Source: Macrostomum lignano
Taxonomy: Eukaryota
Direction: 5' to 3'
Assembly: GCA_002269645.1 (NCBI GenBank)
Contig: NIVC01000938.1
Span: 62,001-126,000, forward strand
Length of the DNA stretch: 64,000 bases
A program made the translations under genes and the position numbers. Under the pieces are notes generated by a model. That model saw nothing but the letters and a program-made list of their open reading frames with translations, did no database searches and was not told the DNA's origin. Of the stretch, positions 1,431 through 63,129 are shown piece by piece (positions within the stretch are counted from its first letter, which is position 1; each line of letters opens with the position of its first letter).

Positions 1431-1440
1431 CAGCTCTCAC

Positions 1441-39040
<37,600 letters not shown>

Positions 39041-39134
39041 GCTTTTAATGCGTGTCTTTTAGGTGAATACAATAGCAAAACCAAAGACATGAAACGTGAT
39101 GATTGTCGATATTACAACTCTAAAACTATTATAA

Positions 39135-40215
39135 CACTGCATACTACCTTATGGCACCACAATGTCTTATAATTTCTTTATCTGCATTTATCCTAGTCAC
39201 TCACTATCACATTCCCTAATAATTACAGTCACTCACTATCACCTAATTCACTAACAATTACAGTCACTCACTATCACATTCCCTAATAATTACAGTCACT
39301 CACTATCACCTAATTCGCTAACAATTACAGTCACTCACTATCACCTAATTCACTAATAATTAGTCACTCACTATCACCTAATTCACTAATAATTAGTCAC
39401 TCACTATTACCTAATTCACTAATAATTACAGTCACTCACTATTACCTAATTCACTAATAATTACAGTCACTCATTATCACCTAATTCACTAACAATTACA
39501 GTCACTCACTATCACTTAATTCACTAACAACTACAGTCACTCGCTATCACCTAATTCCCTAATAATTACAGTCACTCATTATCACCTAATTCACTAACAA
39601 TTACAGTCACTCATTATCACCTAATTCACTAAAAATTACAATCACTCACTATCACCTAATTCACTAATAATTATAGTCACTCACTATCACTTAATTCACT
39701 AACAATTACAGTCACTCGCTATCACCTAATTCCCTAATAATTACAGTCACTCACTATCACCTAATTTACTAACAATTACAGTCACTCATTATCACCTAAT
39801 TCACTAAAAATTACAGTCACTCGCTATCACCTAATTCCCTAATAATTACAGTCACTCGCTATCACCTAATTCCCTAATAATTACAGTCACTCACTATCAC
39901 CTAATTCACTAATAATTACAGTCACTCGCTATCACCTAATTCCCTAATAATTACAGTCACTCGCTATCACCTAATTCCCTAATAATTACAGTCACTCACT
40001 ATCACCTAATTCCCTAATAATTACAGTCACTCACTATCACCTAATTCACTAATAATTACAGTCACTCGCTATCACCTAATTCCCTAATAATTACAGTCAC
40101 TCGCTATCACCTAATTCCCTAATAATTACAGTCACTCACTATCACCTAATTCCCTAATAATTACAGTCACTCACTATCACCTAATTCACTAATAATTACA
40201 GTCACTCATTATCAC
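39135..40215. repeat. 35-bp minisatellite CAGTCACTCACTATCACCTAATTCACTAATAATTA
   Basis: About 30 copies starting about 100 bp upstream of the ELP1 ATG. Confidence 0.95.
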
Positions 40216-40834
40216 ATTCATAACACCAGACACTTTAATCAAGCTAGCTAACATTGCCCCGAAAAAACAATTTCAAAACGATAAAACAAAACGTTTTAAA
40301 AAATAATATAAACCGTGTAATAAGTATCGCTTGTTTTTTAAAAGAAAATTTTAGCGACAGAAAAAACTCTGTATTTAGCAAAGTGCAGTGCAGTTCAAGT
40401 GTCTTTGCGACAGTGGCTGTGGAAAACAAAGGTCACCAAAACAGAAAAATATAGGAGCTTTATCTTCGTTGGATAGACTGCTTTTAAAAAAAACATTTTT
40501 TTTGGTTTTGCTTCATTTAAAATTGAAAAATTATCAATTTAATCAAAGCGGATAATAGCAGATAAAAGTTTTGATAAAAAGGCATCCAATATTCGTAAAA
40601 AAATAGCCGAATAATATAAACTAAAAATTTAATTAGAGCCTTTAGAATTATACAATGTAGCTAAATAATGGAAGTAGATAAATAACTTGAACTTATTGCT
40701 CGCAAAAATTTCCGATTTTAACACTACAGTAGACGGCATAGCACAAATTAAAAATAACAATTTATAAAGAAGAATAATACATTACTTATTTATGACGCAT
40801 TACATGCATACTATATTTAATAGCAACTGTCAAG

Positions 40835-43399: not shown

Positions 43400-44345
43400 A
43401 ACAATCACTTATCCATTATCTACTTATCCCTCTTATCCACCTGTAATGTATCTCCCTCTGTCTTATCTCAGTCTCCCCTGTCTCCCTCTCCCTTATCTCC
43501 CTCTCCCTTATCTCCCTCTTCCCCATCTCCCTCTCCCCTATTTCTCTCTCATGTATCTCCCTCTCAACTATCTCCCCCTTCCCTGCCTTCCTCTCCTCTA
43601 TCTCTCTCTCCCCTATCTCCGTCTCCCTTATCTCCCTCTCCCCTATCTCCCTCTCCCCTATCTCCCTCTTCCTTATCTCCCTCTTCCCCATCTCCCTCTC
43701 CCCTATGTCTCTCTCATGTATCTCCCTCTCAACTATCTCCCCCTTCCCTGCCTTCCTCTCGTCTATCTCTCTCTCCCCTATCTCCCTCTCCCCATCTCCC
43801 TCTCCCCTATCTCCCTCTCCCCTATCTCCGTCTCCCCTATCTCCGTCTCCCCTATTTCCGTCTCCCTTATCTCCCTCTCCCCATCTCCCTCTCCCCTATC
43901 TCCGTCTCCCCTATCTCCCTCTCCCCATCTCCCTCTCCCCTATCTCCGTCTCCCCTATCTCCGTCTCCCCTATTTCCGTCTCCCTTATCTCCCTCTCCCC
44001 ATCTCCCTCTCCCCATCTCCCTCTCCCTTATCTCCGTCTCCCCTATCTCCGTCTCCCCTATCTCCGTCTCCCCTATTTCTGTCTACCCTATTTCCCTCTT
44101 CCCTATCTCCCTCTCCCCATCTCCCTCTCCCCTATCTCCGTCTCCCCTATCTCCGTCTCCCCTATCTCCGTCTCCCCTATCTCCGTCTCCCCTATCTCCG
44201 TCTCCCCTATTTCCGTCTACCCTATTTCCCTCTTCCCTATCTCCCTCTTCCCTATCTCCCTCTTCCCTATCTCCCTCTTCCCTATCTCCCTCTTCCCTAT
44301 CTCCCTCTCTCCCTATCTCCAATTTTGTCTCCCCTATCCCTATCT
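43400..44345. repeat. About 15-bp CT-rich repeat CTCC(C/G)TCTCCCCTAT
   Basis: Direct inspection. Confidence 0.9.
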
Positions 44346-44459
44346 GCCTTATCTTACCCATTTCTTACCAATTTACCCAGCTATCAATAGTAATATAAAT
44401 ATATCGATGCAGTAACAAGTAAATTAGAGGTTGAATTGGATCAATAACTGGACTGGATG

Positions 44460-46703: not shown

Positions 46704-47750
46704 TGTACAAGAAATTTTTTGATTTATTAGCTTTGAAGCTGATAGATTCAAGTTGCTTTTTTTACAGATTAGCTGTGCTCGAAGCTCTGAAATATGAATT
46801 TCAAATTAAAAAAAATTAGCTGCTTTCGCGACTTACGAGCCATAGATAATAAAAAGAATTGCGTCATTTTTAATCTTCCGCTACAAAAATTCAGTAAAAT
46901 GTTCTACTTTCTACTGGTATGAGTAGACGAACTCTAAGTAAACGTAAAATTTAAAAGGCCAAATATTGTTTTCGGGTATTTGTAAACATTGCAAAAAATA
47001 ACCAATTTTTATTAATGCTCAAATATATCAGCTGCTTAGCTTTGCAATAATGCTGCTGAGTTACAAGCAAATTAAGAATACAGTGCATTACCTTAAATAG
47101 AAGCTTAAATATACAGTAAACTTGTAACTGCAGTGCACTTAACTACACAAGTAAAAAATTGGTTCGCTGCAAATTAGTGACTTTTTGTTAAATAATACTT
47201 CTAAACAGTTGTTTTCTGTTCAGTTTCAATTTCTTCAACCGAAGTACTAATAACAATATTAGCAATGTAAACTACTCAGGAAGCATTTTAAAGCATTCAC
47301 AGGGATGCAAAAATTAAAAAAGTGCATTAGCATAGAAAATATCAAATTAGGATAAAAATCCAATTGGTACAACTTTATCAAGATTCTTTACAATAACGTT
47401 ATAGAAAAAAAAGGTGCAGGAAAAGCATGAAAACATTTCTGTACTACGTTACTCATATATAAAAAACATGACTGAACTGTCATGACTTTCGATAAATTTT
47501 CTGAAAATATCGAAAAAGTACTCATTAGTAAACCCAAATAGAAAAATTTAATAAACAACAGTATAACAGACTAATAACGACAGTTGCGTTTGACTAAATA
47601 TCACAAACGTTGGTGTTCGTTTACTAGAAAAATAAGATGCTTCTATTTTTAAAAGTTTTAGTTACATTTTAAAAATTACTTCAAACACGTATACAGGGTG
47701 TTAATTATTTGTTTTACAGAACTTAAAACTGCAAAGCAGTTTCTCGTATA

Positions 47751-48115
47751 CTAGTTTGGAGGCAGAGGGTTGTGTGCACCCTGGCGCACTTTAGGCGACA
47801 TTGTCACACAACCGGCGAGAGGCATTGCTGCCCATTCCGCCGACTCCCCTGAGCAGGCACTCAAGCGCGCGGATACGTACGCAGTCATACGCACAGGCAC
47901 ACACTCACACAGGAGTGTACAGCGGCCCTAACTTTATCTATTGTTAGACATGCACACTTCACTGTGCTTTGGGGGTTGGCCCTCAAGGACGTTAATTGCA
48001 CGAGCAGAGCCAAGCCGAGATTCCAATTAAGCCCCAAATTAATGTGACTGCACTTGGAATCGAGCCTGGGCCGCTGGCACATCAGAGCACCGCCGCTTGA
48101 CCACTGGGCTACGGC
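47751..48115 (-). mobile_element. tRNA-derived SINE, copy 2
   Basis: Head GCCGTAGCCCAGTGGTCAAGCGG...GGCTCGATTCC; body matches copy 1. Confidence 0.8.
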
Positions 48116-48544
48116 TCCACTTTAGTGTATTTACTAACGCATTAGTTCGATGTCTTTGATCGTTAATCGTCAGTTTGACACTGACAGACATTTAACAAAG
48201 TGTTATTTATTTCGATTATTACACGAACTACATGCGCAAAATTTGCTAAATGAAAATTTGCCTTGCGATTTATACTTTATCATATTGCTCTTACCGTGTA
48301 TGAGGACTAAAAAACACCAAGGACTGCACAAAAGTGCGATAGTCAAAAAAGTTGGTTTTCAAACAAAAAAGTTGTTAACAAGCTAAACAATAGGAATAGG
48401 AAATAATCTAATGACATGGAAATGTTGATCGAGTCTTTAAAAAAACACCTAAAAGTCTTTAGAGACACAGCCAAAAAATTGCGTTTTTATGATAAAAAAT
48501 TGAATATTACACCAATTTATAAATTTTTAGATGATTTATTAAAG

Positions 48545-48970
48545 AGGGATCGGCAAATTTTGGCCCTCGGGTCCTTTAAAACTTTAAAATAGCAATCCGG
48601 CCCGCTCAAGGTTTTTGTCTCTTTCCAGTTCTCTTCTGTCTTTCTTATATTATCTCTTCTCTCAATCTCTCATCTAATCTCTCCTCATATAACTTCTATC
48701 CTCTAATCTCTTTCTTTCATTATCTTCTCTCATCTTATATTCTCTTTCTTCTATTCTCTATCATTTAACTCATTTATCTCCCATCTCACTTATCTCGCCT
48801 ATGCTCTTATTTTTTCTCTCCATCTCATCTCGCCTCTCTTCTCTTCACTTTCATCTCCTCTCTCGCCTCTCCTCTCTTATCTCCTTAATTAACTGTACCT
48901 GCCCCGCAGTCATGAGCTAGATTCTTTATCTGGCCTTTGAAATAAAAAAAAATAAAAATTTGCCGACCCC
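48545..48970. mobile_element. hAT-like MITE with a CT-rich interior
   Basis: AGGGATCGGCAAATTTT ... AAAATTTGCCGACCCC ends and subterminal GGCCC motifs. Confidence 0.6.
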
Positions 48971-49081
48971 CCACTTAGAGCATGATACAGTGCAATAACT
49001 TTGCTATAATGTGGTTTTCTAACAATCAAGTCTTAAGGCTACATTAGCTGTCTAAGAAACAACAACAGCATAGTCCGTTAG

Positions 49082-50725
49082 CTACACGACACATGTAAAT
49101 GACCTTGGGATTAGAAAATCAAGCAGCGGCCTGTCTGCATACTTAGTAGGACAATTCCGTCTTGCATACCACTCCATGCTGTACAGACACATCAGCACGC
49201 CTGTGCCAAGAAACAGGCAAACCCAGACAAATACAGCCCAGAAACGGGAGCGACCGTTGGCAAACATTAGCGCAAATCCGAAACTGCAAAATGAGACAAA
49301 TAATGCCGGAAAGAAGAAGCCTAAACCGAAAGAAATTACAATTTCGTGGAAGATGGCCGACAGGAGGAACACGCAGACGGTTGCTAACAGACGATATTCG
49401 TATCCAAGCAACATGCAGATCTCGCGATACACATAGGCGTATAGCCAATCGTGTACAACGGTATTCCAAGTTCGGTACCAAGTTCTAAACGACGTAGCAT
49501 TCCACCAATCGCAGTAAAACTGTCTATCGCCAAATGTAAGCATTTCCGCGAAAGCGTTCATCCACGAGTGCAGAACAGTGAAGAATGTGATTAGCAGTAC
49601 TAGGCCGCCAGGTAGAGCCGATTGGAATGCTGTGCGAACAAAATGAGCCAGACTGGGCCTACGCCAATGGCTAAACACTGGTCGATAGTAGCGCAGCACC
49701 AACAGGTAGACAAAGAATATTCCGGCAACAACTTGACCAAGATTAGACGCCACGTAGTCCCATCGGATGTGATCAGTTCGCGGATAATTATCCCGATAAA
49801 CCAGAGTTGGGGCGAATAAAAAGTACAAGAACCGACCGAAGCTAGGACAACAAGGCGTCAGACTAGCAGTTGACGAAGAACTATCAGAAGCGGTGGCGCT
49901 ACAACTACCAGTCGACGAATAGTAACCACGACGTGCATTCTCCCAAAGGAAAGCGTGAACCTTCATCATTAGGCGAGCCTGTTCGGTTAGTACTATTAGA
50001 GCAGAGGCGGGCAGCAATTCAAACTGCAGAACCATACGAATCGGCTGCACTAGAAACCATAGCTGATAAACTGAGTAAGCAATCATCCACATAGACTTAC
50101 TAATCCGACTATGGCCTTTAGTGCCAGCAATGCTTACATAGTAGTGAAAAGCCGGATAAAAAACTAGCAAAGCAGCCGCGTGCATCAACAGCCAGATTGC
50201 TATAGCGTCGGATAGCCGACCGAATGCCCAGAACACTAGCGACAAGGAGAATGTGTCAATCAAGGATTTACCTTCTAGAACGTCCGAGATAAGCGTGTTT
50301 AAACAGAACAGCGACATTATTGCAATGAAGATGTTTTGCAAACTGCGAAAATGCGCCAGTTCAAACAGCTCAGTTAGTAGACTATTGCGCAAGTGAAAGG
50401 TTTTCGGAGGCAGACGCTGTTCAACTGACAAATTGTCATCATTCTTGCCTTGACGATTATTTTTAGCCTGGTAACTAATATTGGCGTCGAGAGCGGCTAA
50501 GGAGTCTAGTGACGTCATGCGAGCGGTTTCTGAACTCGCAGGTGCATCTACCAATGACGTCTCAAGCTCCGTTGACGCTCTGTCAATCAAGCCAGTCAGC
50601 TGTGAATCCAACAGCTCCAGAATCGACTGCTTGTCGTGTAGAAACTTTCGACGCCGACGAGCGTCTTCGAGTACGTTTAAACTGCCGTTGCTTCGCCTGG
50701 CGTTTTCTAATGACGACCGGTGCAT
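49082..50725 (-). CDS. SOAT1: Sterol O-acyltransferase (ACAT, MBOAT family), intronless, 547 aa
   Basis: FAEMLTFGDRQFYCDWWNATSFRTWYRTWNTVVHDWLY, SAIFHE (catalytic His), APTLVYRDNYPRT and final EWYAR...C motif. Confidence 0.93.
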   Translation of the reverse strand: MHRSSLENARRSNGSLNVLEDARRRRKFLHDKQSILELLDSQLTGLIDRASTELETSLVDAPASSETARMTSLDSLAALDANISYQAKNNRQGKNDDNLSVEQRLPPKTFHLRNSLLTELFELAHFRSLQNIFIAIMSLFCLNTLISDVLEGKSLIDTFSLSLVFWAFGRLSDAIAIWLLMHAAALLVFYPAFHYYVSIAGTKGHSRISKSMWMIAYSVYQLWFLVQPIRMVLQFELLPASALIVLTEQARLMMKVHAFLWENARRGYYSSTGSCSATASDSSSSTASLTPCCPSFGRFLYFLFAPTLVYRDNYPRTDHIRWDYVASNLGQVVAGIFFVYLLVLRYYRPVFSHWRRPSLAHFVRTAFQSALPGGLVLLITFFTVLHSWMNAFAEMLTFGDRQFYCDWWNATSFRTWYRTWNTVVHDWLYAYVYREICMLLGYEYRLLATVCVFLLSAIFHEIVISFGLGFFFPALFVSFCSFGFALMFANGRSRFWAVFVWVCLFLGTGVLMCLYSMEWYARRNCPTKYADRPLLDFLIPRSFTCVV

Positions 50726-52185
50726 CTTGTGGCTGATCTAAATACCACAGAGAAGCTGACTGTTTATTATAATGAACTATTCGCCGAACTCAAGTTCGGT
50801 CAAAATTGTCCGACAAATTTTAAGCCGTCTCCGTATCGAGTCTTGCATCAAGCAAAAGAGCAAAAGGCAGAGGGCGCCAATTTAAAGACTTTGAAAAATG
50901 AAAAAATGGTCTGGAAACATTTTATCAAACTGTTATCAAACTGCTATCTCACTCAAGGCGCTCCTAAGGTACTCGCAGTTAGAGTAGCTAGCTTCAGACA
51001 GCAACAATCATTATCAGTTGTGTAAATTGCTAACACTATTATAAACCACTGATAGTTATCCACTGCAGCACGAACTTGGACTCGAACTTGGGTGCGATGG
51101 CCCCCACTTGAACTTGAACTCGAACAAGCGCACTGACAAAAACGGGGGAAAAAGAAATATAAAAATATTGACGCTAAAGATATATAGATTAAGCTACACT
51201 GAATTCAAAACAGAAACAGCAACAATAAGACTATCTGCGCAAGCAGTAAGTAACTTTAAAGTACGCTCGTATATTTTTAATTCAAACTTATTAGTCAATT
51301 AAATTAATATACAAGTAACGCAAATAAGGAAAGACTTGCAAATACAACAACAGTAACTAACAGTAGAATTCAGAATAAAATGCGACTGCAAATTTTCATT
51401 ATATTTTGCACTATCTAATGTTAACTCATCGTTAAATAATACCCTTGTAAAACTGTATATAACCTTGAAGCAATGCATAATTTTTTTAAATTGAAAATTT
51501 TTTATATATTTTCTCACAACTCTTAACAGTCAATAGTTTCAAGATTTAAAGAATCTCCACACGGAGTAGAAAAAGTAGAAAAACATTCCGTTAAAACTTG
51601 CTTGCGTCATTACACAACCGAAAAGTTTGTATATAACAATATAAAACCTAATCTTTTTGTCTACAAGTTAACACAAAAATAATTTGTAGCACAAGTTTTT
51701 AAAAGCAAACTTCAATTTTTTTCAATATTCATCTAGCTGCTTTAGTTAGTTACTTGTGTCTTTGGAGTTGGAGTTGAGCAGAGAATGTCTTTGGTCAAGT
51801 CTGTCTTTGATTCGCTGATGGGGAAAGAGTTGAGCCATAGACTTAATTTCACAAGGTTCTGGAGAAACACTTGTTTGCTTTAATCTAGGGAAGTGACGAT
51901 ACAGAGCTTTGTTATCACTTATGACGGTCTAAATGGGAATTCGGACAATCAAAACGGAACGCCATAGACATTCAAGCCAGGCCACAGATCACACACACAC
52001 AGGTCATGGTCATGGACTGAAGCAGTTTAGCAAAGTCTACTGAGGGAGGCTTGGCCATAGACTATAACTTTGGACATTCAATATCGGAGAAAGCCTTTCA
52101 AAACGGGAATCGGACTGAGATTTTACAGCTCTCTGTCCGTCCCTTCCCTGTTTGCTCGTCTTTGGCCTGAAAGCGACCCCATTCA

Positions 52186-52452
52186 ATGGCGCTACCAATT
52201 CGTGTAGCAGATCGCCAGCGGCTGACTGATGCGATTGAACAAAGGTCATACATTACAGGAGCTGCAAGAATCTTGCAAATCAAGAAAACAACCGCCTTTC
52301 AAAGCGCTGCCAGCTTTCGACTCGATGGCAGAGTGGAATCCCTTCCTCGCGGTGATCCGAAAGAAGGATTGTGCAAAGCCGGTCAGGAAATGAGAGAATT
52401 CTTGGTTGAGAAACTTAAAGAAAGTTCTTTCCTGACGCTAAAAAATGTCTGA
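52186..52452 (+). pseudogene. IS630/Tc1-like transposase N-terminal HTH relic
   Basis: AARILQIKKTTAF...GRVESLPRG...FLTL pattern, truncated. Confidence 0.55.
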
Positions 52453-53144
52453 ATTTTTCACTTTTAAATATATCCAGTGGCCCTGGGATATAAAAAAACA
52501 CTAAATTGGGCGAATTACCGTTTTGAATGGCTTTTTCCCATATTGATTGTCCATTTTACATGGTATGGTTGATTGGTTGTGTAGTCCCAAGCAGCCCGAG
52601 TTTGTGGCCTGGTTTGAATGCATATGGCGTGCCGTTTTGATTGTCCAAATTCCCATTCAGATCATCGAAAGCGATACAAAAGTCTGCTTACTACGTCCAA
52701 AGAATTTTAAACTGAAGCAATATGCCTATCAAATGTATTTGACTTATCAACGGAAGAGCCAGCGTGGGTTACTTACTGAATTAGCAAGTCAATATCTGGA
52801 AGACCTAAGCAGCAAATTTTTTGGAGGGGGAAATTCCGGACAGCTCAATGAGCTGAAACTGAAACAGCTTGAACAATACTAACGAGACTAAAAGTTCAAC
52901 TGAACTTCCAAAGTGACAATTAGTTTTGCTATTAAGGTCACTCCACATGTAACATTTAGTTGCTAACAAATTGTTAATTTTTGTTTCTCAGAAATCATAC
53001 ACTCCATCGAACTGAACACTGCTTGGACCATAGACTATGCGAAATTCCAGACGGAATTTCATTGATTGCCTGCCTCCAAATCCATAAACACGATCAGCCT
53101 GGAGAAGTTACTTAGTGACAATTTTCAATGTATTCATGAGTAGT

Positions 53145-55906
53145 TTAACCAACTGCAGCTTGCGACAACAGAGCCAAAATCTCGGCATTATCAGTTAGAT
53201 CCTCAGGCTTGACGGTCTCAGACTCGTCCTCAACTGAGATGTCGAATTGTCCACCAGAAGCCAGCAACAATGCGACTACAGTCTTAACGGATTCGATTGA
53301 TTGTGTAGAGGCTACGGCTGTGTGCAACGGAGTCATACCGTCACAGTCCGGTCTATTAGGATCAGATCCCAGCTTCAGCAATTCCCTACAGGCTGCTTCA
53401 TCAGCTCGATCAGCTGCCCAATGCAACAGAGTCTGACCAGCAGAGTCTGCGCTAGATTTTGCCAATTCCGGCTTGCTTTTTAACAGTGCCCGAACTCGTT
53501 CGGTTAAACCGTCTGATTTAAACAAAGTGAAAGCTTGCAAGATTTCTTTATCAATTTTATCGTCATGTTCAACATCGTTGTCGCCTTCAACACTGCCTAG
53601 CGCCGTCATTGTGCTGACTCTGGCGCCAAATGCTGCACCGCCAGCGCCGCTGTCTTTGCCAAATTTTTTATCAGAAGAAGACCAATCAGGAAAACGATCG
53701 CTGACAAAGGCTACGTACTCTGACATGGCCGTTTCTGTCGGCATTTGGCCCAACGAGTGCCAAGCGTCCCTGTTGTGATATTTATACATTTTAGTTGCTA
53801 CGTCACTTGATAATTAATAACTGATTTCTATTGGATTTATCAAGTCTCAGTACTATTTTATCCGTATCTCTAATCTCAGTTGATATCTTCATTGGGTATC
53901 TCTAATCTCAGTTGATATCTACATTGGGTATCTCTAATCTCAGTTGATATCTTCATTGGGTATCTCTAATCTCAGTTGATATCTTCATTGGGTATCTCTA
54001 ATCTCAGTTGATATCTTCATTGGGTATCTCTAATCTCAGTTGATATCTTCATTGGGTATCTCTAATCTCAGTGGATATCTTTATTGAGTATCTCTAATCT
54101 CAGTTGATATCTTCATTGGGTATCTCTAATCTCAGTTGATATCTTCATTGGGTATCTCTAATCTCAGTTGATATCTTCATTGGGTATCTCTAATCTCAGT
54201 TGATGTCTTCATTGGGTATATCTAATCTCAGTGGATATCTTTATTGAGTATCTCTAATCTCAGTTGATATCTTCATTGGGTATCTCTAATCTCAGTTGAT
54301 ATCTATATTTGGTATCTCTAATCTCAGTTGATATCTTCATTGGGTATCTCTAATCTCAGTTGATATCTACATTGGGTATCTCTAATCTCAGTTGATATCT
54401 TCATTGGGTATCTCTAATCTCAGTGGATATCTTTATTGAGTATCTCTAATCTCAGTTGATATCTTCATTGGGTATCTCTAATCTCAGTTGATATCTACAT
54501 TGGGTATCTCTAATCTCAGTTGATATCTACATTGGGTATCTCTAATCTCAGTTAATATCTTTATTGAGTATCTCTAATCTCAGTGGATATCTTTATTGAG
54601 TATCTCTAATCTCAGTTGATATCTTCATTGGGTATCTCTAATCTCAGTTGATATCTACATTGGGTATCTCTAATCTCAGTTAATATCTTCATTGGGTATC
54701 TCTAATCTCAGTTGATATCTACATTGGGTATCTCTAATCTCAGTGGATATCTTTATTGAGTATCTCTAATCTCAGTTGATATCTTCATTGGGTATCTCTA
54801 ATCTCAGTTGATATCTTCATTGGGTATCTCTAATCTCAGTTGATATCTACATTGGGTATCTCTAATCTCAGTTGATATCTACATTGGGTATCTCTAATCT
54901 CAGTTGATATCTTCATTGGGTATCTCTAATCTCAGTTGATATCTACATTGGGTATCTCTAATCTCAGTTGATATCTTTATTGAGTATCTCTAATCTCAGT
55001 GGATATCTATATTTGGTATCTCTAATCTCAGTTAATATCTACATTGGGTATCTCTAATCTCAGTTAATATCTACATTGGGTATCTCTAATCTCAGTCAAT
55101 ATCTATACTGGGTATCTATAATCTCAGTCAATATCTCTAATCTCAGTCAATATCTACATTGGGTATCTCTAATCTCAGTTAATATCTACATTGGGTATCT
55201 CTAATCTCAGTTAATATCTACATTGGGTATCTCTAATCTCAGTTAATATCTACATTGGGTATCTCTAATCTCAGTGGATATCTATATTTGGTATCTCTAA
55301 TCTCAGTTAATATCTACATTGGGTATCTCTAATCTCAGTCAATATCTATATTGGGTATCTATAATCTCAGTCAATATCTCTAATCTCAGTCAATATCTAT
55401 GATATTGGACACCTCTAAACTCAGACTAGATTCCATCGGGTAACTCGTGTTTTTTAAAAACTACTAAAAATTTAAAAAATCATTCAGACTGTTCCGGGGA
55501 CTAAAAACCCATTTAAAAGTACTTATTAAACTTGTATAAAAGCATCACTGGATATCTATTATCTAAAGTCTCCTTAAAAAATCTTACCATTTCTGTTTGC
55601 CTTGAAAATCGAAAAATCCAGGTCTCGGAATATTGCAAGGTCCGTCCAGAGCCTAAAAATTCAAAGTTTTGAACTGTTTAAAACTGAAAAATGCATTTTT
55701 CCTACTAACATAAGTAGAAGAAAACGCATTTTATAGCTGAAGAATATTACCTGCTTATATCTGGCGTAAAGATACAGCAGTTCGTCAGGCTTCAAGTTGC
55801 CAGTTGCGCTTCGAACGAACAGCGAAGCGCCTTGAAATTCTTTTTTTAAAGGCGACCAACTGTCCATTGAATCTTCGTCTTCGGAATCCAAAGGGTTACT
55901 CATCAT
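53145..55906 (-). CDS. ACBD6: Acyl-CoA-binding domain plus ankyrin repeat protein; exons 55751-55906, 55588-55652, 53145-53769; 281 aa
   Basis: LLYLYARYKQ|ALDGPCNIPRPGFFDFQGKQK|WDAW (ACB domain), then ankyrin LLHWAADR and GMTPLHTA. Phases 0 and 2 are consistent. Confidence 0.92.
53855..55400. repeat. 32-bp minisatellite TATCTCTAATCTCAGTTGATATCTTCATTGGG
   Basis: About 48 copies in ACBD6 intron 2. Confidence 0.97.
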
Positions 55907-56019
55907 TCAGCTGGAAAACAGTAATCTAATTAAAATAGGTTATTGTGAATCATAGGATTGTTTCTAGATTAGGTCAGAATTAAGTTTTCAGAAAAATATT
56001 ATGAGTGTTATTGTTACTG

Positions 56020-57230
56020 AGTCTCTAGATCAGGATTGTAAGTCTCTAGATCAGTATTGTGAGGCTCTTGATCAGTATTGTAAGTCTCTAGATCAGGATT
56101 GTCAGTCTCTAGATCAGGATTGTGAGTCTCTGAGATCAGTATTGTGAGTCTCTAGATCAGGATTGTGAGTCGCTGAGATCAGTATTGTGAGTCTCTAGAT
56201 CAGGATTGTGAGTCGCTGAGATCAGTATTGTGAGGTTCTTGATCAGTATTGTAAGTCTCTAGATCAGGATTGTAAGTCTCTAGATCAGGATTGTAAGTCT
56301 CTAGATCAGGATTGTCAGTCTCTAGATCAGGATTGTAAGTCTCTAGATCAGGATTGTAAGTCTCTAGATCAGAATTGTAAGTCTCTAGATCAGGATTGTA
56401 AGTCTCTAGATCAGGATTGTAAGTCTCTAGATCAGGATTGAGTCTCTAGATCAGGATTGTCAGTCTCTAGATCAGGATTGTAAGTCTCTAGATCAGGATT
56501 GAGTCTCTAGATCAGGATTGCAAGTCTCTAGATCAGGATTGTAAGTCTCTAGATCAGGATTGTCAGTCTCTAGATCAGTATTGTAAGTCTCTAAATCAGG
56601 ATTGTAAGTCTCTAGATCAGGATTGAGTCTCTAGATCAGGATTGTGAGTCGCTGAGATCAGTATTGTGAGGTTCTTGATCAGTATTGTAAGTCTCTAGAT
56701 CAGGATTGTAAGTCTCTAGATCAGGATTGTAAGTCTCTAGATCAGGATTGTAAGTCTCTAGATCAGTATTGTAAGTCTCTAGATCAGTATTGTAAGTCTT
56801 TAGATCAGGATTGTAAGTCTCTAGATCAGGATTGTAAGTCTCTAGATCAGGATTGTAAGTCTCTAGATCAGGATTGTAAGTCTCTAGATCAGGATTGTGA
56901 GTCTCTAGATCAGTATTGTAAGTCTCTAGATCAGGATTGTAAGTCTCTAGATCAGGATTGTAAGTCTCTAGATCAGGATTGTAAGTCTCTAGATCAGGAT
57001 TGTAAGTCTCTAGATCAGGATTGTAAGTCTCTAGATCAGGATTGTGAGTCTCTGAGATCAGTATTGTGAGGCTCTTGATCAGTATTGTAAGTCTCTAGAT
57101 CAGGATTGTAAGTCTCTAGATCAGTATTGTAAGTCTCTAGATCAGGATTGCAAGTCTCTAGATCAGGATTGTAAGTCGTTAGATCATTATTGTGAGCCTC
57201 TAGATCAGGATTGTGAGCCTCTCAATCAGG
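56020..57230. repeat. 21-bp minisatellite TCTCTAGATCAGGATTGTAAG
   Basis: Fills most of the BCS1L-ACBD6 spacer. Confidence 0.97.
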
Positions 57231-57440
57231 TTTGAGTTTCATACGCTTTAAAACTTGAAATTCTTAGTAAACAATGAAAGCAAAGGGGACTTAAGACAAA
57301 GAAAATGTTACTATTTTGTAAATCACTCAACTTTAAATATGTTCTTATATTATATTTAGCTAATTAATTATGCTACAATTGAACTAATTCAGCACTTAAG
57401 CGGCCAGAATATTAAATGCCAAATTTACAACTCCAAGCCT

Positions 57441-58456
57441 TCAAGCAGCCTCAGCAACAGTCAGGCAGTCAGTAGCCGAATCCAAAGCCGCTTTCCAATC
57501 TGATTTGTGCATTAGAAAATGTCCTTGCACTTTAGCCGGACTAATTCTGGCGCTTTCAACGCAATCAATTGAATCGCTAATTAATAATTTATTAGCAAAT
57601 TCTTTAGCCGCTTCCATACCGGCCTCGGGATAAAACCTGGCAAACATTCGGACCAGCTGATCTCGGGTGCAGTAGCCAATTCGGACGTAGAGGTCAACTC
57701 GACCTGGCCGGGTCAGAGCTGGGTCCAGCCGCTCGGGGTAATTAGTAGTCATAAACAGCAGCCGGCCCTCAGATGACGTCACCCCGTCTAAGGTGTTCAA
57801 CAGGCCGGTCAGGCTGATCCCGGGCATGCCGGAGTACCGGCTAGGCGACTCGGCTAATCTAGCTTGAGCAGCCAGAGCGGCATCGACATCTTCCAGTAGC
57901 AGAACAGACTGAGGCGGCGCGTGATTCAACAGGTGGTCCAGGCGGGCATCGTCTAAGCCGTATTCGCCCAGGTTCAGCATGCAGATTGAGCACTGGAGAG
58001 AGCCGGCCAAAGCTGTGATGAAGCTGGTCTTGCCGCAGCCGGGCGGCCCGTGCAGCAGGTATCCGCGTCGGTAGGGGACTCCGCGGTCCGTGTACCAGCG
58101 CTGGCTGGATTGGAACTCCCTGATGTCAGCCAGGAGCGATTCGGCTTGGCCAGCTGCAAGAATCACCTGCGGTTATGCATTTGTTGAGCAATGGATTATC
58201 AGGTGGACTTTAGCGTGAGGAGAGGGGATAAAGGAAAATGGGAGAGAGTAATGTAGCTTATAGTGAGTGACTAATTTTTCCCAGTTCCTTTCCGGATACT
58301 GAATTACAAATAATCAGGCATTAGAAACCGGGACTCCAACCCGCGTCTATTCAATTATCCAACTAAATGCGTTAATCTAAACGCTATCATAATATTATAA
58401 CTTTTAGCATCGATCTGCAGGTAAAAGCTGGTTCAAAAGCAATACCTGAATGTCTG

Positions 58457-58508
<52 letters not shown>

Positions 58509-58738
58509 GGCAGACAGGCAGGCAGACAGACAGAAAGACGGCAGACAGGCAGACAGACAGAAAGACAGACAGACCGGCAGACAGACAGGCAGACAGGCAG
58601 ACAGACAGAAAGACAGACAGACCGGCAGACAGACAGGCAGACAGACAGGCAGACAGACAGACAAACAGACAGGCAGACAGACAGACAGACAGACAGACAG
58701 ACAGGCAGGCAGACAGACAGAAATACAGACAGACCGGC

Positions 58739-58790
<52 letters not shown>

Positions 58791-58858
58791 CGGCAGACAG
58801 GCAGGCAGACAGACAGACAGACAGGCAGACAGACAGACCGGCAGACAGACAGACCGGC

Positions 58859-58894
<36 letters not shown>

Positions 58895-60562
58895 CGGCAG
58901 ACAGACAGGCAGACAGACAGGCAGACAGACAGGCAGACAGACAGACAGGCAGACAGACAGGCAGACAGACAGACCGGCAGACAGACAGACAGACAGACAG
59001 ACAGGCAGACAGACAGGCAGACAGGCAGACAGACAGGCAGACAGACAGGCAGACAGACAGGCAGACAGACAGGCAGACAGACAGACAGGCAGACAGACAG
59101 ACAGACAGGCAGACAGACAGACAAACACAGACTCACGGATTCAACCGGCCGCCTCCGCCTGGGATAGCCGAACGGCTCCCACTCGGCGCCCCTGGCCTTG
59201 TACACCACAGTCCAGCCCTCCCTAGCCTGGAAAGCCATCTCCCTGGCCTCGTCCAGCACCCGATCGAAGACGCCCCGACCGCGCCCGATGGCCGTCAGTC
59301 GAACCGATTCGAATGGCGACGTTTCGCCCGTTCGCTCTCGACGCATCTGGGCTTCGCGATTGCGCTCAACTCTAATCCAGGTGCCGCCGTAGCGAAAGAA
59401 ATGATTGCCAACGCTCGGCAGGTAGGAGCTCCTGTTGTTGGTGAAAGGACAGTCTTTAATATGCGTTTCTCTTTCTACTGTTATCTCTCCACTCTAACTT
59501 ATCCCTCCCTATCATATACTGTCCCTTCTTTACCTACTCTTTCATTTTCTTATCTACTCTCTCACATATTATCTACTCTCTCCTATCCTTATCCACTCTC
59601 TCCTATCCTTATCCACTCTCTCCTATCCTTATCCACTCTCTCCTATCCTTATCCACTCTCTCCTATCCTTATCTACTCTCTCCTATCCTTATCTACTCTC
59701 TCCTATCCTTATCTACTCTCTCCTATCCTTATCCACTCTCTCCTATCCTTATCTACTCTCTCCTATCCTTATCTACTCTCTCCTATCCTTATCTACTCTC
59801 TCCTATCCTTATCTACTCTCTCCTATCCTTATCTACTCTCTAACCTCCTTATCTACTATTTCCCTTCATATCTACCATCTCCTATTCTTATCTACTCTCC
59901 ATCCTCCTTATCTACTCTCAACTCTCCTTTCTTATCTACCATCTCTTATCCTTATCTAGTGAGCTCTCCTTATCTACTCTCTCCCTTCATATCTACCATC
60001 TCTTATCCTTATCTAGTGAGCTCTCCTTATCTACTCTCTCCCTTCATATCTACCATCTCTTATCCTTATCTAGTCTCTACTCTCCTTATCTACTCTCTCC
60101 CTTCATATCTACCATCTCTTATCCTTATCTAGTCTCTACTCTCCTTATCTACTCTCTCCCTTCATATCTACCATCTCTTATCCTTATCTAGTCTCTACTC
60201 TCCTTATCTACTCTCTCCCTTCATATCTACCATCTCTTATCCTTATCTAGTCACTACTCTCCTTATCTACTCTCTCCTCACTTAGTAATTATCCGGCCAC
60301 TGTCGCTCTGTTCCAGCGCAGTCTGCACGCTAACATGCTGACAATTGCCAACCCGCTTAGTGATCCACTGCAGCAGCCAAGCATAGCTGGGATCGTGGCT
60401 GGGCACTTCAAGCGTGGCCGTGTAGCGACGCCGCAAAAAAATAGCGCCCAATTGTGCGCCACGACGCAGCGCGGTGAGGCCAACTCCTACTCCGGCTAGG
60501 CCGAAACCGGCGCCAAAGTACGGATTGTCCTTAAATAGGTCGTTGAAGTAGTCTGAGACGCC
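57441..60562 (-). CDS. BCS1L: Mitochondrial AAA chaperone BCS1; exons 60282-60562, 59137-59431, 57441-58166; start codon lies upstream
   Basis: [38 protein letters not shown], Walker [30 protein letters not shown]. Phases 2 and 0 are consistent. Confidence 0.96.
58455..59130. repeat. (CAGA/CAGG)n microsatellite
   Basis: Direct inspection. Confidence 0.97.
59540..60280. repeat. CT-rich arrays: a 20-bp unit followed by a 57-bp unit
   Basis: TATCTACTCTCTCCTATCCT first, then a 57-bp period (59944 to 60001). Confidence 0.9.
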
Positions 60563-60631
60563 CTGAAGCGAGTGAAAATAACTTTGAGGTTATTTTAGTG
60601 GTAAAATAGACTCTAGTGTACAATTTTATAC

Positions 60632-60649
60632 CATAGTAAAAGAGGATTT
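60632..60649 (-). CDS. BCS1L: Candidate 18-nt BCS1L micro-exon ending in ATG
   Basis: TTCTGTTTTTTTTTTACATAG|AAATCCTCTTTTACTATG|GTATAA; a 69-nt intron to the phase-0 acceptor at 60562. Confidence 0.5.
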
Positions 60650-63129
60650 CTATGTAAAAAAAAAACAGAAGGAAATCTTCAATCAAATATACTAAAAATT
60701 ATTGCTCTATTGCAGGGATTAGCAAACTCTGGCCCACAGACAACAAACAGACATAAAATGTTCACTATGACTTTCTTTATAGCAAGGTTCAACTTTTCCT
60801 AGACCATGGTTTAGAAACTTGCCAAGGGCTATATTGCCTTCAATGAAAAAGCAGACTTTTCTATTTAAATAAAAATGCAAAAGCACTAGTCAGACACTAT
60901 TTAGATGCTTAAGCTTGTTGGTGCTATTGTGAGCTGCTTTGTGAGATATGTTAGTAAAACCACAAGAACTTTCTGATGCACTAAATAGTAAGTAATAGAT
61001 CATGGCTTTGCACTTTTCTTAAATGCATTAGACTTAATCCTACCAAATATATCAATTTCTTATAGACTATAATACCTAGTCAAACCCTAGATACACAAAA
61101 TGGCTCATGGAAAAAAATGTTTTAATAAAACTACTCTCACCTATAAGACAAAAGCAATTTAGGCCTAACTGCATTCTAATCTATTAGACAATTCTAGCAA
61201 TATTTTTATTATAATCTGTCAAGATATTTAGGAAGAATAGATCAACTACAAACTAGAATAAAATTAACTATAAAGACATGGCATACATATTCTCAAAGAT
61301 ACTGTTTTTTGGAAAAATTCTTATATGCAACTAGGTTTTCAACAGTTTACTATTATGTACATGGTGTAAGACCAAGATAGCCATATACCAAGATGGCCAC
61401 AATATTCAATTGCTATTGTATCTACTCTTTTTCTATTATTAATGACGTAGGGCTTGCTTCTGTCCTTATAAATAATTCCACAATGCCACCAAAGTTATAA
61501 CAAGGCTTTTGGCTCTCTCTAGAAATCCCACCGTTGAGACACCAAAGTTGTTACAGGGGTTATTTCTTCCTCACGACCTTACTGGTTACTACTTGCCTTC
61601 TACTAGTACTGCATGTCTACTACTTCTATTGGTAGCATATGTACTTTTATTGGTAGCATATATACTTTTATTGTACTTTCTGGCCTGAGCGGTCTTTTAG
61701 GCACTGTCTATCCTATCCTTATATTCCTCTAAAGATATTATTCTCAGTCCTGGGCATTCCTGGGATCAGAGGGTCACAGCGCACTTCGCTGGGTATTCTG
61801 CCCTGAGGTGGGTTTTTCAGACTCTAAGCCTAGATTTCTCTACACTGTGGTAGGAATTCTGCCTTCTAAAGGCGGGTTACTAGACTCCTAAGTCTAAGAT
61901 TTCTCATTCTCTGAGAACGGACTGAACTCCCAATCTTGGGGCAACTCCTATGTCACTATCTACTACTTGAAATAAGTAACACAAGTGATCACAAGCCCAA
62001 GGCTGATTTGAAGCTTGATCAATGTTCGAAACAATGGTACAAGACCAACAAACAAGAAAAGGTTCACAAGGTTATTTATTTTGGCTCCCAGCTGACTCCT
62101 ATTTATAGTAAAATTTTCCTAGTATATAAAACAAAGTATTAATACATAGAATATTTAGAATATTTTGCATATAATAAATATTTTTATATTCGCATAGTAT
62201 AACAACAGTAGTACATTTTTGAAATGCAACTTTTTCTAAGAAATTGTTATAAAAACTGGAGGCCTATTATATTAATTAGCAATTTCATAGCTATTGTTGT
62301 ATTTATTATTATGTTAATCAATCATATTTATCAATACTAATATAATAATAGATTTGAAACTAATGACCAATAATATAAAACCAATTGATATTTTTCAGTG
62401 CTTGTGCCAATTTATTCTCTATCATATATCTATCAATATCAAATCTATTACTATCAGTTTATCAAGAAACCATTGCTAGTGCTAGTGGTACTGGTAATGC
62501 TATAGAGCAAAATGGGATCAATATGCAACAAGGTATTTATTTTGTGCTAGGCTACTTGATTTATGTAGTAGATAAATATCTATAGGCCAGGCTATAATAA
62601 AAGCTAAAGCCAAAAAGAAATGATTATAATACAATATAATTCTATTTCTATCTATCTTCTTAAGACTTAAAGATCTACACCTAATAAAAATTACTACAAA
62701 TAGAAAATAAGTGAAATATGTAGACCTAGACTTATTATTATCTATTTAGACATTTAGAACTATGGCCATCTTAGTGTATGGTCCTATAGACATCTTGGTC
62801 ATGTGACATGTACACAATGTATATCAAAAAATCAATAAGTTTTTTGTATACTCTGTATAATAGCGCACATAATTTTTTTTAATATTGGTCTTGGTCTTGG
62901 TCTTTGGTCTATCAACTTTGACATTATAGATTTGATCTGACCCTTATATAAGCAAAGTGAAAAAATTGTTACATGTATATATAGCTATGTATAACATCTA
63001 GGCCTAGCCAAGCTGGCCAATTTGGTTATTTGGCAAAACACTGCAGCCAAAACAAAAAGTCACAAAAAATGCTCTCCCAAAAAAACCAATATAGTACTAC
63101 ATAGTTGGCAATGCTATGTTCCAGCCAAA

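What the first reader, a model, noticed from the sequence alone, without database searches (positions are those of the whole stretch)
39040..60650. Six co-oriented genes: candidate SL trans-spliced operon
Seen: BCS1L, ACBD6, SOAT1, NUDCD3, the TMEM272-like gene and ELP1 are all on the minus strand, with spacers of 1.5-2.4 kb that are largely repeats or TEs. AG acceptors sit just upstream of the start codons: ACBD6 TTTTCCAG| 4 nt before ATG, SOAT1 TATTTAG| 12 nt, NUDCD3 TCTATCAG| 35 nt, TMEM272-like CTTTGCGGCAG| 89 nt, and a poly-T acceptor at 60649 for BCS1L; the ELP1 candidate is weak. Established: flatworms use SL trans-splicing, which can resolve polycistronic RNA. Inference: a polycistronic unit whose spacers were inflated by minisatellites.
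Basis: inference. Interest (0 to 1): 0.7.

Follow-up and report, generated by a model that had tools for sequence, protein, structure and literature searches.

The report
Flatworm same-strand gene row, partly operon
Six real genes lie head-to-tail on one strand of the flatworm Macrostomum lignano genome, and the public annotation of sister copies already treats at least four of them as one spliced-leader-resolved transcript, so this is an ordinary case of a published phenomenon.

Summary
The window is Macrostomum lignano contig NIVC01000938.1:62001-126000. This species has one 35-nt spliced leader (SL) ending in ATG, and about 15% of its genes are assigned to operons. All six genes are real and lie on the minus strand: BCS1L, ACBD6, SOAT1, NUDCD3, a small membrane protein and ELP1. 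The spacers measure 1534, 2419, 2378, 2129 and 2444 nt.

Three spacers are mostly repeats (79%, 64%, 62%). The two that flank SOAT1 are not (0%, 20%).

The BCS1L site at 60649 is wrong. BCS1L has no genomic ATG, and its CDS starts at 60562, right after TCACTCGCTTCAG. The SL's ATG is in frame there and supplies the missing Met.

GenBank names built on transcriptional units (TUs) put BCS1, SOAT1 and NUDCD3 of the two sister copies in one cluster, Mlig000667. TMEM falls in other clusters, and the window's own BCS1L stands alone in its cluster.

Verdict: a polycistronic unit BCS1L→NUDCD3 is likely, and a single six-gene operon is unproven. The idea that repeats inflate operon spacers was published for this species in 2021. 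Low novelty.

The parts
60563..60564 (-). SL trans-splice acceptor AG of BCS1L (TCACTCGCTTCAG|GGCGTC). It matches the [T/C]TNCAG motif, and the SL's terminal ATG is in frame and supplies the initiator Met.
   Evidence: The GenBank partial CDS PAA74579.1 starts at 60562. The same start is used in the third copy (L003 1078) and in UniRef A0A1I8FUE6. There is an in-frame TAA upstream and no ATG before the acceptor. Orthologues carry Met one residue before the first encoded Gly.
57441..60562 (-). BCS1L gene: exons 60562-60282, 59431-59137 and 58166-57441, 433 aa without the Met. Its introns hold GACA-type and 20/59-nt tandem arrays.
   Evidence: The exon model is identical to PAA74579.1, named BOX15_Mlig021660g1, partial. 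Pfam finds BCS1_N, AAA and AAA_lid_BCS1.
60649..60650 (-). Rejected as the productive site.
   Evidence: Spliced here, the SL's ATG reads MKSSFTMV and then a stop. The BCS1L frame has a TAA between this site and 60562.
56020..57234 (.). A 21-nt minisatellite of about 58 copies that fills 79% of the BCS1L→ACBD6 spacer (55907-57440). Only 319 nt of the spacer is non-repeat.
   Evidence: TRF and repeat coverage. The spacer length differs among copies: 1534, 2164 and 1532 nt.
55911..55912 (-). Candidate SL acceptor of ACBD6 (ACTGTTTTCCAG|CTGA ATG). It is the only [T/C]TNCAG match in the whole spacer, and the spacer has no GTRAG donor.
   Evidence: Caveat: the AG is TG in the third copy, and L002 has a 32-nt deletion just upstream. 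No RNA evidence was available.
53145..55906 (-). ACBD6 gene: exons 55906-55751, 55652-55588 and 53769-53145, 281 aa. Intron 2 holds a 32-nt minisatellite (53864-55400).
   Evidence: Splice model. Pfam finds ACBP and ankyrin repeats. The protein is absent from the protein collection, including GenBank.
50726..53144 (-). ACBD6→SOAT1 spacer, 2419 nt. No tandem or dispersed repeat was detected here. A consensus acceptor TGTTTCCAG| (G at 50911) lies 186 nt upstream of the SOAT1 ATG.
   Evidence: The GenBank SOAT1 proteins of the sister copies are complete rather than 'partial', which implies an mRNA 5' end upstream of the in-frame TAG at 50740-50738.
49082..50725 (-). SOAT1 (sterol O-acyltransferase, MBOAT family), a single exon of 547 aa.
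   Evidence: It differs by two residues from Mlig000667g4. It is not annotated in GenBank on the window's own contig.
46704..49081 (-). SOAT1→NUDCD3 spacer, 2378 nt: 5% tandem repeat plus a 360-nt dispersed repeat (47756-48115). The third genomic copy carries an insertion of about 10 kb at the equivalent of about 48927.
46785..46788 (-). Likely NUDCD3 acceptor, CATATTTCAG|AG|, 83 or 81 nt upstream of the ATG.
   Evidence: The GenBank 5'-partial NUDCD3 CDSs start 78 nt upstream of the ATG in the third copy and 63 nt upstream in the window copy (46766).
44460..46703 (-). NUDCD3 gene: exons 46703-46474, 45879-45417 and 44780-44460, 337 aa.
   Evidence: The L002 model is identical to PAA69574.1, named Mlig000667g5. 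Pfam finds Nudc_N and CS.
42331..44459 (-). NUDCD3→TMEM spacer, 2129 nt. It holds a 15-nt minisatellite (43449-44320), a (TTG)n run (42347-42409) and a dispersed repeat (42497-42922), leaving 768 nt of non-repeat sequence. The published TU clusters break here.
41485..42330 (-).
   Evidence: The sister copies are Mlig018727g2 and Mlig001680g1.
39041..41484 (-). TMEM→ELP1 spacer, 2444 nt. It holds a 62-nt minisatellite (40869-41358) and a 35-nt minisatellite (39195-40215), together 62% of the spacer. No [T/C]TNCAG match is present.
   Evidence: The older-assembly model A0A1I8IR33 splices the TMEM codons into ELP1 exon 1 across this spacer.
1400..39040 (-). ELP1 gene. Its first exon is 39040-38672. 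Further exons run to about 1400 through minisatellite-rich introns. The 3' limit is approximate.
   Evidence: The GenBank CDS starts at 39040 and gives 1431 aa with Pfam ELP1 domains.

Best explanation
This is a same-strand row of six housekeeping genes in Macrostomum lignano, present in three near-identical genomic copies. It is most likely transcribed as two or more long Pol II units rather than as six separate genes or as one six-gene unit.

The upstream block BCS1L→ACBD6→SOAT1→NUDCD3 is read through as a polycistronic precursor. 3'-end formation and addition of the single 35-nt spliced leader at an AG upstream of each cistron cut this precursor into mRNAs. TMEM, probably together with ELP1, forms a further unit.

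BCS1L is the first gene of the row and is itself trans-spliced. Its exon 1 starts directly with codon 2, so the SL's 3'-terminal AUG is its only start codon. Minisatellites have expanded three of the five spacers, and their length varies among the copies. This shows that spacer length is not constrained.

What is shown: gene identities and models, the missing ATG in BCS1L, membership of BCS1, SOAT1 and NUDCD3 in one TU cluster, and repeat content. What is inferred: actual co-transcription in this particular copy, the acceptor positions for ACBD6, SOAT1, NUDCD3, TMEM and ELP1, and the number of promoters.
For: The species and its biology are documented. M. lignano has a single SL, CGGTCTCTTACTGCGAAGACTCAATTTATTGCATG. 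About 30% of its genes are trans-spliced and about 15% are in operons of up to 9 genes. Repeats are said to inflate operon spacers (PMC8629364).

BCS1L: the GenBank 'partial' CDS starts exactly after CTTCAG in the window copy and in the third copy. No ATG lies in frame upstream. Orthologues carry Met one residue earlier.

Naming rule: the name prefix is a cd-hit-est 95% cluster of assembled transcriptional units, and the gN suffix marks genes cut out of a unit at SL-read and poly(A) peaks (PMC5730564). The names are SOAT1 = Mlig000667g4, NUDCD3 = Mlig000667g5 and BCS1 = Mlig000667g6.

The BCS1L→ACBD6 spacer leaves 319 nt after removing repeats. It contains one consensus acceptor, 4 nt before the ATG, and no GTRAG donor. 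The NUDCD3→TMEM and TMEM→ELP1 spacers drop to 768 and 933 nt, below the published 1-kb operon threshold.

A chimeric TMEM-ELP1 gene model exists in the older annotation. Such chimeras are taken as signs of polycistronic precursors in flatworms (PMC12582326).

No co-oriented gene is called within about 8.8 kb upstream of BCS1L. The next called gene is divergent.
Against: No SL-containing reads or precursor RNAs could be inspected. No M. lignano RNA-seq contigs were found through the protein collection.

The TU evidence comes from the two sister copies. In the window's own copy, BCS1L sits in a single-gene cluster (Mlig021660g1), and ACBD6 and SOAT1 are not in GenBank at all. In the third copy SOAT1 is a separate TU (Mlig021377g1), with a 12.7-kb spacer before NUDCD3.

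The two spacers that flank SOAT1 stay at about 2.4 and 1.9 kb after the repeats I could detect are removed. That is above the 1-kb criterion.

TU assemblies from reads that map to three copies about 95% identical can merge or split genes artificially. The candidate ACBD6 acceptor is mutated in one copy. An antisense TU, Mlig019265g1, overlaps the last exon of ACBD6 in L002.
Confidence: 0.55

Rival explanations
1. All six genes, from BCS1L to ELP1, form one operon driven by a single promoter upstream of BCS1L. The published break between NUDCD3 and TMEM is an assembly artefact caused by the 15-nt minisatellite.
For: The authors of the operon survey state that RNA-seq-derived units tend to split in repeat-rich intergenic regions (PMC8629364). 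The NUDCD3→TMEM spacer is 64% repeat and leaves 768 nt of other sequence, under the 1-kb threshold. All six genes are co-oriented, with nothing called on the other strand between them in the window. Operons of up to nine genes are reported for this species.
Against: No name or model links NUDCD3 to TMEM in any of the three copies. In the third copy the annotated NUDCD3 mRNA begins at its own 5' end, 12.7 kb from SOAT1. ELP1 has only weak acceptor candidates, and its spacer contains no [T/C]TNCAG match.
Confidence: 0.2
2. The six genes are independent, each with its own promoter, and happen to point the same way. Some are trans-spliced as monocistronic genes. The multi-gene TU cluster reflects read-through, overlapping UTRs, or merging of multi-mapped reads by StringTie/TACO.
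For: Most trans-spliced M. lignano genes (about 60%) are not in operons. The raw spacers of 1.5-2.4 kb are 15-25 times the ~100-nt mode of operon spacers. Two spacers contain little repeat. TU membership is inconsistent between the copies. The unique sequence upstream of SOAT1, NUDCD3 and TMEM is as conserved among copies as coding sequence. A six-gene run has a chance of about 1/32. Gene order is not shared with the older SOAT paralogue or with two cestodes.
Against: Under cd-hit-est at 95% identity, a TU carrying BCS1 can share a cluster with one carrying SOAT1 and NUDCD3 only if a single assembled transcript covers all of them. That needs continuous RNA coverage across more than 6 kb of spacer. 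The conservation signal does not discriminate, because all unique sequence is only 1-3% diverged.
Confidence: 0.2

Closest known systems
Macrostomum lignano SL trans-spliced operons (Wudarski et al. 2017, PMC5730564; Ustyantsev & Berezikov 2021, PMC8629364)
   Same: It is the same organism with the same single 35-nt SL. The genes are co-oriented neighbours. Precursor-like transcriptional units are cut at SL and poly(A) peaks. Spacers are lengthened by simple repeats and TEs. The genes are conserved housekeeping genes, the class enriched among trans-spliced genes.
   Different: The two spacers around SOAT1 exceed the published repeat-adjusted 1-kb threshold when only the repeats I could detect are removed. 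The published units cover four genes in the sister copies, not six, and not the window's own copy.
Caenorhabditis elegans operons (SL2-type)
   Same: Downstream cistrons in a polycistronic Pol II transcript are resolved by 3'-end formation coupled to SL addition. Operon sizes are similar, at 2-8 genes.
   Different: Intercistronic regions in C. elegans are about 100 nt, and a dedicated SL2 marks downstream genes. Here the spacers are 1.5-2.4 kb and there is only one SL, so SL identity cannot mark operon membership.
Flatworm SL 3'-terminal AUG used as initiator methionine (Cheng et al. 2006, cited in PMC12582326)
   Same: The SL ends in AUG. BCS1L exon 1 begins in frame at codon 2 with no genomic start codon, so the SL must supply the Met.
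   Different: That mechanism was described in parasitic flatworms. Here it is inferred from sequence and annotation in a free-living macrostomid, for all three copies of an essential mitochondrial chaperone gene.
Polycistrons of parasitic flatworms (Schistosoma, Echinococcus; PMC12582326)
   Same: These are same-strand gene pairs or sets in which the downstream gene is SL trans-spliced. Chimeric gene models are taken as traces of precursors, sometimes across spacers of several kb.
   Different: Their candidate operons are usually defined by spacers of 300 nt or less. The SOAT neighbourhood differs in the two cestodes examined, where a Lactamase_B gene lies on the opposite strand.

Membership tests
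M. lignano operon as defined by Ustyantsev & Berezikov 2021 | Immediately adjacent genes lie on the same strand, not interrupted by a gene on the other strand. | tested here: met
   Six consecutive minus-strand genes were found. No opposite-strand gene is called between them in the window copy. In L002 one antisense 65-aa GenBank gene overlaps the last exon of ACBD6. A plus-strand GPCR lies nested in an ELP1 intron, not between genes.
M. lignano operon as defined by Ustyantsev & Berezikov 2021 | The downstream gene of each pair is SL trans-spliced, shown by SL-containing reads at its 5' end. | not testable with these tools
   No reads were available. Indirect evidence exists only for BCS1L, the first gene: it lacks an ATG and its partial CDS starts right after CTTCAG. 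ACBD6 has a consensus acceptor at -4. For SOAT1, NUDCD3, TMEM and ELP1 only candidate sites exist.
M. lignano operon as defined by Ustyantsev & Berezikov 2021 | The intergenic distance after subtracting repeats is below 1000 bp. | tested here: inconclusive
   The CDS-to-CDS remainders are 319, 2419, 1902, 768 and 933 nt. Three pairs pass. The two pairs around SOAT1 fail with the repeats detectable here, but no genome-wide repeat library and no UTR ends were available.
M. lignano operon as defined by Ustyantsev & Berezikov 2021 | An assembled precursor (transcriptional unit) covers several genes (Wudarski 2017). | tested here: met
   This is met for BCS1L through NUDCD3 in the sister copies: Mlig000667 g4, g5 and g6, read with the naming rule. 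It is not shown for NUDCD3→TMEM or for the window's own copy. For TMEM→ELP1 there is only a chimeric older model.
Classical nematode-type operon | The intercistronic region is about 100 nt, and a specialised downstream SL (SL2) is used. | tested here: not met
   The spacers are 1534-2444 nt. M. lignano has a single SL (PMC8629364). No SL RNA gene lies in the window.
SL-AUG-initiated mRNA (flatworm) | The SL ends in AUG, the acceptor places it in frame with the ORF, and no upstream genomic start codon is available. | tested here: met
   The SL sequence ends in ATG. The acceptor at 60563/60564 places the ATG in frame with GGC GTC TCA. An in-frame TAA lies 27 nt upstream with no ATG after it. The N-terminus aligns with orthologues that have one extra Met. 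Translation from the SL's AUG was not tested experimentally.

The most novel reading that the evidence does not exclude
All six genes, spanning about 60 kb from the BCS1L acceptor to the ELP1 3' end, are one Pol II unit. Its intercistronic regions have been stretched 15-25-fold by minisatellites and still support SL resolution. The first cistron, BCS1L, depends entirely on the SL for its start codon. That would make this one of the larger flatworm operons, and a natural demonstration across three copies with different spacer lengths, including a 10-kb insertion, that operon function tolerates kb-scale spacers.
Probability: 0.2. Interest if true: 0.35.

Novelty: already known. Interest (0 to 1): 0.15.

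Why it matters
It matters little beyond annotation. SL operons in M. lignano, their size range and the inflation of their spacers by repeats are all published, and the public gene names already encode a multi-gene transcriptional unit for this locus.

Three points are useful locally. First, the true BCS1L 5' end is now placed, and BCS1L is a clean example of a gene that has no start codon of its own and borrows the SL's AUG. Second, the three copies have spacers of different length, including a 10-kb insertion between SOAT1 and NUDCD3. They form a natural series for asking how long an intercistronic region can grow before co-transcription fails. Third, anyone choosing promoter fragments for transgenesis should not assume that the DNA just upstream of ACBD6, SOAT1 or NUDCD3 contains a promoter.

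Tried and rejected
1. RNA evidence through public run assemblies. I searched the protein collection with SOAT1, with a chimera of the six N-termini, and with an ACBD6/ELP1 chimera. No M. lignano RNA-seq-derived proteins came back, so SL-bearing 5' ends could not be fetched. The last two searches were swamped by BCS1 and ELP1 homologues.

2. The representative search with ACBD6 and ELP1 exons was swamped by ankyrin proteins. As a result, the TU names of ELP1 and ACBD6 could not be obtained.

3. Supplement and full-text searches for Mlig000667, Mlig018727, Mlig001680, Mlig021377 and Mlig021660 found nothing.

It later succeeded through the cluster look-up.

5. Conservation among the three copies as a promoter test. 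Unique spacer sequence is 1-3% diverged, about the same as coding sequence, so the test has no discriminating power.

6. I considered reading the TU prefix number as a length rank, where a low number would mean a long unit. I dropped this because Mlig030309 carries a 497-aa CDS, which fits a pure length ordering poorly.

7. Older linkage. The 60%-identical SOAT paralogue has unrelated neighbours on the opposite strand. The SOAT genes of two cestodes are flanked by Lactamase_B and WD40 genes. This gives no evidence for an ancient conserved cluster.

8. Rfam, tRNA and SL-sequence scans of the window found nothing.

9. GTRAG donor counts in the spacers are at the level expected from base composition, about 4 per 2.4 kb by my own estimate. 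They are uninformative except for the BCS1L→ACBD6 spacer, which has none.

10. I briefly joined the two overlapping third-copy loci in a script to place the 10-kb insertion, then deleted the file. The insertion's ORFs have no credible Pfam family.

Full report
**Origin of the window**

The 281-aa ORF at 42330-41485 is encoded exactly on GenBank contig NIVC01000938.1 of assembly GCA_002269645.1. The SOAT1 ORF is 99.6% identical to "BOX15_Mlig000667g4 [Macrostomum lignano]". From the locus coordinates, the window is NIVC01000938.1:62001-126000. The same gene row occurs twice more in the assembly, at about 93-95% nucleotide identity. One copy is on NIVC01001310.1 (locus L002). The other is on NIVC01000027.1 (loci L003, L004 and L006). 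Three copies fit the published duplicated karyotype of the sequenced line (PMC8629364).

**What is known for this species**

M. lignano has a single 35-nt spliced leader (SL), CGGTCTCTTACTGCGAAGACTCAATTTATTGCATG. About 30% of its genes are trans-spliced. The top motif at trans-splice acceptors is [T/C]TNCAG. About 15% of genes are assigned to operons of two to nine genes.

The operon survey states that repeats inflate operon spacers. Once repeats are subtracted, the spacer distribution peaks near 100 bp, and 1 kb is used as the operon threshold (PMC8629364).

The genome paper assembled RNA-seq into "transcriptional units" (TUs) and clustered them with cd-hit-est at 95% identity. Clustered TUs share a name prefix. 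The TUs were then cut into genes (gN) at peaks of SL reads and poly(A) reads. The GenBank release dropped non-coding transcripts and transcripts that overlap repeats (PMC5730564).

**Check of the observation**

All six genes are real and lie on the minus strand.

- BCS1L has exons 60562-60282, 59431-59137 and 58166-57441. This model is identical in sequence to PAA74579.1 and carries the BCS1_N, AAA and lid domains.
- ACBD6 has exons 55906-55751, 55652-55588 and 53769-53145, with ACBP and ankyrin domains.
- SOAT1 is a single exon, 50725-49082.
- NUDCD3 has exons 46703-46474, 45879-45417 and 44780-44460, with Nudc_N and CS domains.
- A 281-aa membrane protein with no Pfam family lies at 42330-41485.
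- ELP1 starts at 39040 and runs through most of the left part of the window.

The spacers are 1534, 2419, 2378, 2129 and 2444 nt. Tandem arrays plus the dispersed repeats I could detect make up 79%, 0%, 20%, 64% and 62% of them. "Largely repeats" is therefore true for three spacers and false for the two that flank SOAT1.

**The acceptors**

The quoted strings are present. Loosely defined acceptor-like AGs occur once per 46 nt on this strand, and 79% of 90-nt windows contain at least one. The published consensus occurs once per 523 nt, and the chance of a match within 10 nt is 0.02. Only the BCS1L and ACBD6 sites are both consensus matches and adjacent to the CDS.

Spliced there, the SL's ATG runs into a stop after eight codons, and the BCS1L frame is closed by a TAA upstream of 60562. 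The real acceptor is TCACTCGCTTCAG| with its G at 60563.

The sister-copy GenBank proteins are complete rather than 5'-partial, so the annotated mRNA begins further upstream. A consensus TGTTTCCAG| lies at -186.

For NUDCD3, the GenBank 5'-partial CDSs begin 63 and 78 nt upstream of the ATG.

For ACBD6, the acceptor at -4 is the only consensus match in its spacer, and that spacer has no GTRAG donor. However, the third copy has TG instead of AG at this site, and L002 has a 32-nt deletion just upstream.

**BCS1L and the spliced leader**

In all three copies, exon 1 begins GGC GTC TCA (Gly-Val-Ser) directly after the acceptor. No in-frame ATG lies between the upstream TAA and the acceptor.

GenBank lists the product as "partial", starting at that base, both in the window copy (L005 10001 = window 60562) and in the third copy (L003 1078). 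The model from the older assembly starts at the same residue.

Seven orthologues align from the first residues and carry exactly one more N-terminal residue, the Met. The SL ends in ATG and is in frame at this acceptor. The simplest reading is that BCS1L mRNA is always trans-spliced and is translated from the SL's AUG. This mechanism is known for flatworm SLs (Cheng et al. 2006, as cited in PMC12582326).

The older SOAT paralogue behaves the same way. Its "partial" CDS starts exactly after CATGCTTTCAG|. This supports reading such GenBank starts as trans-splice sites.

**Evidence for polycistronic transcription**

The exact-sequence look-ups returned the following GenBank names.

| Gene | L002 copy | Third copy | Window copy |
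|---|---|---|---|
| BCS1 | not in GenBank | Mlig000667g6 | Mlig021660g1 |
| SOAT1 | Mlig000667g4 | Mlig021377g1 | not in GenBank |
| NUDCD3 | Mlig000667g5 | name not obtained | name hidden |
| TMEM | Mlig018727g2 | Mlig001680g1 | name hidden |

cd-hit-est assigns a shorter sequence to a cluster only if about 95% of it matches the cluster representative. A TU that carries BCS1 and a TU that carries SOAT1 and NUDCD3 can therefore share the prefix only if the representative TU contains all three. Since ACBD6 lies between BCS1L and SOAT1, that representative must span BCS1L→ACBD6→SOAT1→NUDCD3. This step is my inference from the stated naming rule.

It means continuous RNA coverage across three spacers in at least one copy. 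The authors interpret such coverage as a trans-splicing precursor.

No link from NUDCD3 to TMEM appears in any copy. For TMEM→ELP1 there is only a chimeric older model, A0A1I8IR33. It begins 15 nt upstream of the TMEM ATG and splices from a GT near the TMEM stop (about 41516) into an AG inside ELP1 exon 1 (about 38873). A recent survey of parasitic flatworms treats such chimeras as traces of polycistronic precursors and notes spacers of several kb among them (PMC12582326).

**Limits of that evidence**

No SL reads or precursor RNAs could be examined here. The TU partition differs among copies. With three copies about 95% identical, multi-mapped reads can both merge and split assemblies. ACBD6 is absent from the protein collection for all three copies, and SOAT1 is absent for the window copy.

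In the third copy, an insertion of about 10 kb lies roughly 155 nt after the SOAT1 stop. The spacer there is 12.7 kb, and NUDCD3 starts its own annotated unit.

After removing the repeats I could detect, the two spacers around SOAT1 remain at 2.4 and 1.9 kb, above the published threshold. I had no genome-wide repeat library and no UTR ends.

**Surroundings**

Upstream of BCS1L there is no called gene for about 8.8 kb. The next gene is divergent. BCS1L is therefore the first gene of the row, and its outron and promoter lie in that interval.

An indel of about 535 nt distinguishes the copies 180 nt upstream of the acceptor. A plus-strand rhodopsin-type GPCR ORF (6654-8201) is nested in an ELP1 intron. 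The window has no SL RNA gene, tRNA gene or Rfam match.

The gene order is not shared with the older SOAT paralogue or with the SOAT loci of two cestodes. Nothing therefore points to an ancient conserved operon.

**Verdict**

The most likely state is that BCS1L→NUDCD3 is a real SL-resolved polycistronic unit and that TMEM, perhaps with ELP1, is a second unit (confidence 0.55). A single six-gene operon (0.2) and six independent genes with artefactual TU merging (0.2) remain open.

The kind of system, the role of repeats in its spacers and the TU annotation of this locus are all already public. The finding is therefore correct in outline, wrong in several details (the BCS1L, SOAT1 and NUDCD3 acceptors, and the repeat content of two spacers), and of low novelty.

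Noticed in passing
window 60562-60564 (also L003 1078, L002 357): BCS1L has no start codon of its own in any of the three genomic copies. The CDS begins at codon 2 right after the trans-splice acceptor, so the SL's terminal AUG must be the initiator.
   Followed up: yes
window 6654-8201 (+): A 515-aa ORF on the plus strand matches rhodopsin-family 7TM receptors (Pfam 7tm_1, E = 6e-11). It lies nested antisense inside an ELP1 intron, between the ELP1 exons at 8777-9904 and 1400-1720.
   Followed up: partly
L003 about 11800-21644 and L004 1-about 4500 (third copy); equivalent to window about 48927: An insertion of about 10 kb lies roughly 155 nt downstream of the SOAT1 stop in the third copy only. 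It stretches the SOAT1→NUDCD3 spacer to 12.7 kb. Its long ORFs have no credible Pfam family, only low-complexity hits.
   Followed up: partly
window 55911-55912; L003 about 5453; L002 about 5870: The consensus acceptor 4 nt before the ACBD6 ATG (TTTTCCAG) reads TTTTCCTG in the third copy. L002 has a 32-nt deletion immediately upstream of it.
   Followed up: no
L002 7297-7494 (-), equivalent to window about 53239-53436 (+): GenBank annotates a 65-aa 'hypothetical protein' (Mlig019265g1, PAA69572.1) antisense within the last exon of ACBD6. ACBD6 itself is missing from the GenBank annotation. This is either a mis-stranded unit or a true antisense transcript.
   Followed up: partly
window about 60743; L003 361-895; L002 1-175: A purine-rich segment of about 535 nt (GAGA/GGAAAG-like) is present in the two sister copies and absent from the window, 180 nt upstream of the BCS1L acceptor.
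   Followed up: no
window 47756-48115 and 27304-27658; window 42497-42922 and 26713-27121: Two dispersed repeat families are shared between the spacers and an ELP1 intron, at 88.6% identity and at 79.8% identity in reverse orientation. They are probably TE fragments.
   Followed up: no
window 46766-45817 (-): On the window's own contig, GenBank annotates NUDCD3 only as a 112-aa product. The gene nevertheless encodes an intact 337-aa protein identical to the L002 product. The annotated isoform seems to use a different acceptor in exon 2 and stops early.
   Followed up: partly
L007 10001 (NIVC01002092.1): The 60%-identical SOAT paralogue (Mlig015400g1, 'partial') also has a CDS that starts exactly after a consensus acceptor, CATGCTTTCAG|, with the SL's ATG in frame. 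Its neighbours (TTL, a CRAL-TRIO/PTP gene) are unrelated to this row and lie on the opposite strand.
   Followed up: partly
window 38159-38635, 39195-40215, 40869-41358, 43449-44320, 53864-55400, 56020-57234, 58457-59127, 59530-60278: Minisatellites with periods of 8-62 nt are unusually dense in both introns and spacers. Many create long spurious ORFs (CLSV..., DRQT..., PLSPS... repeats) that a naive ORF caller would report as genes.
   Followed up: partly
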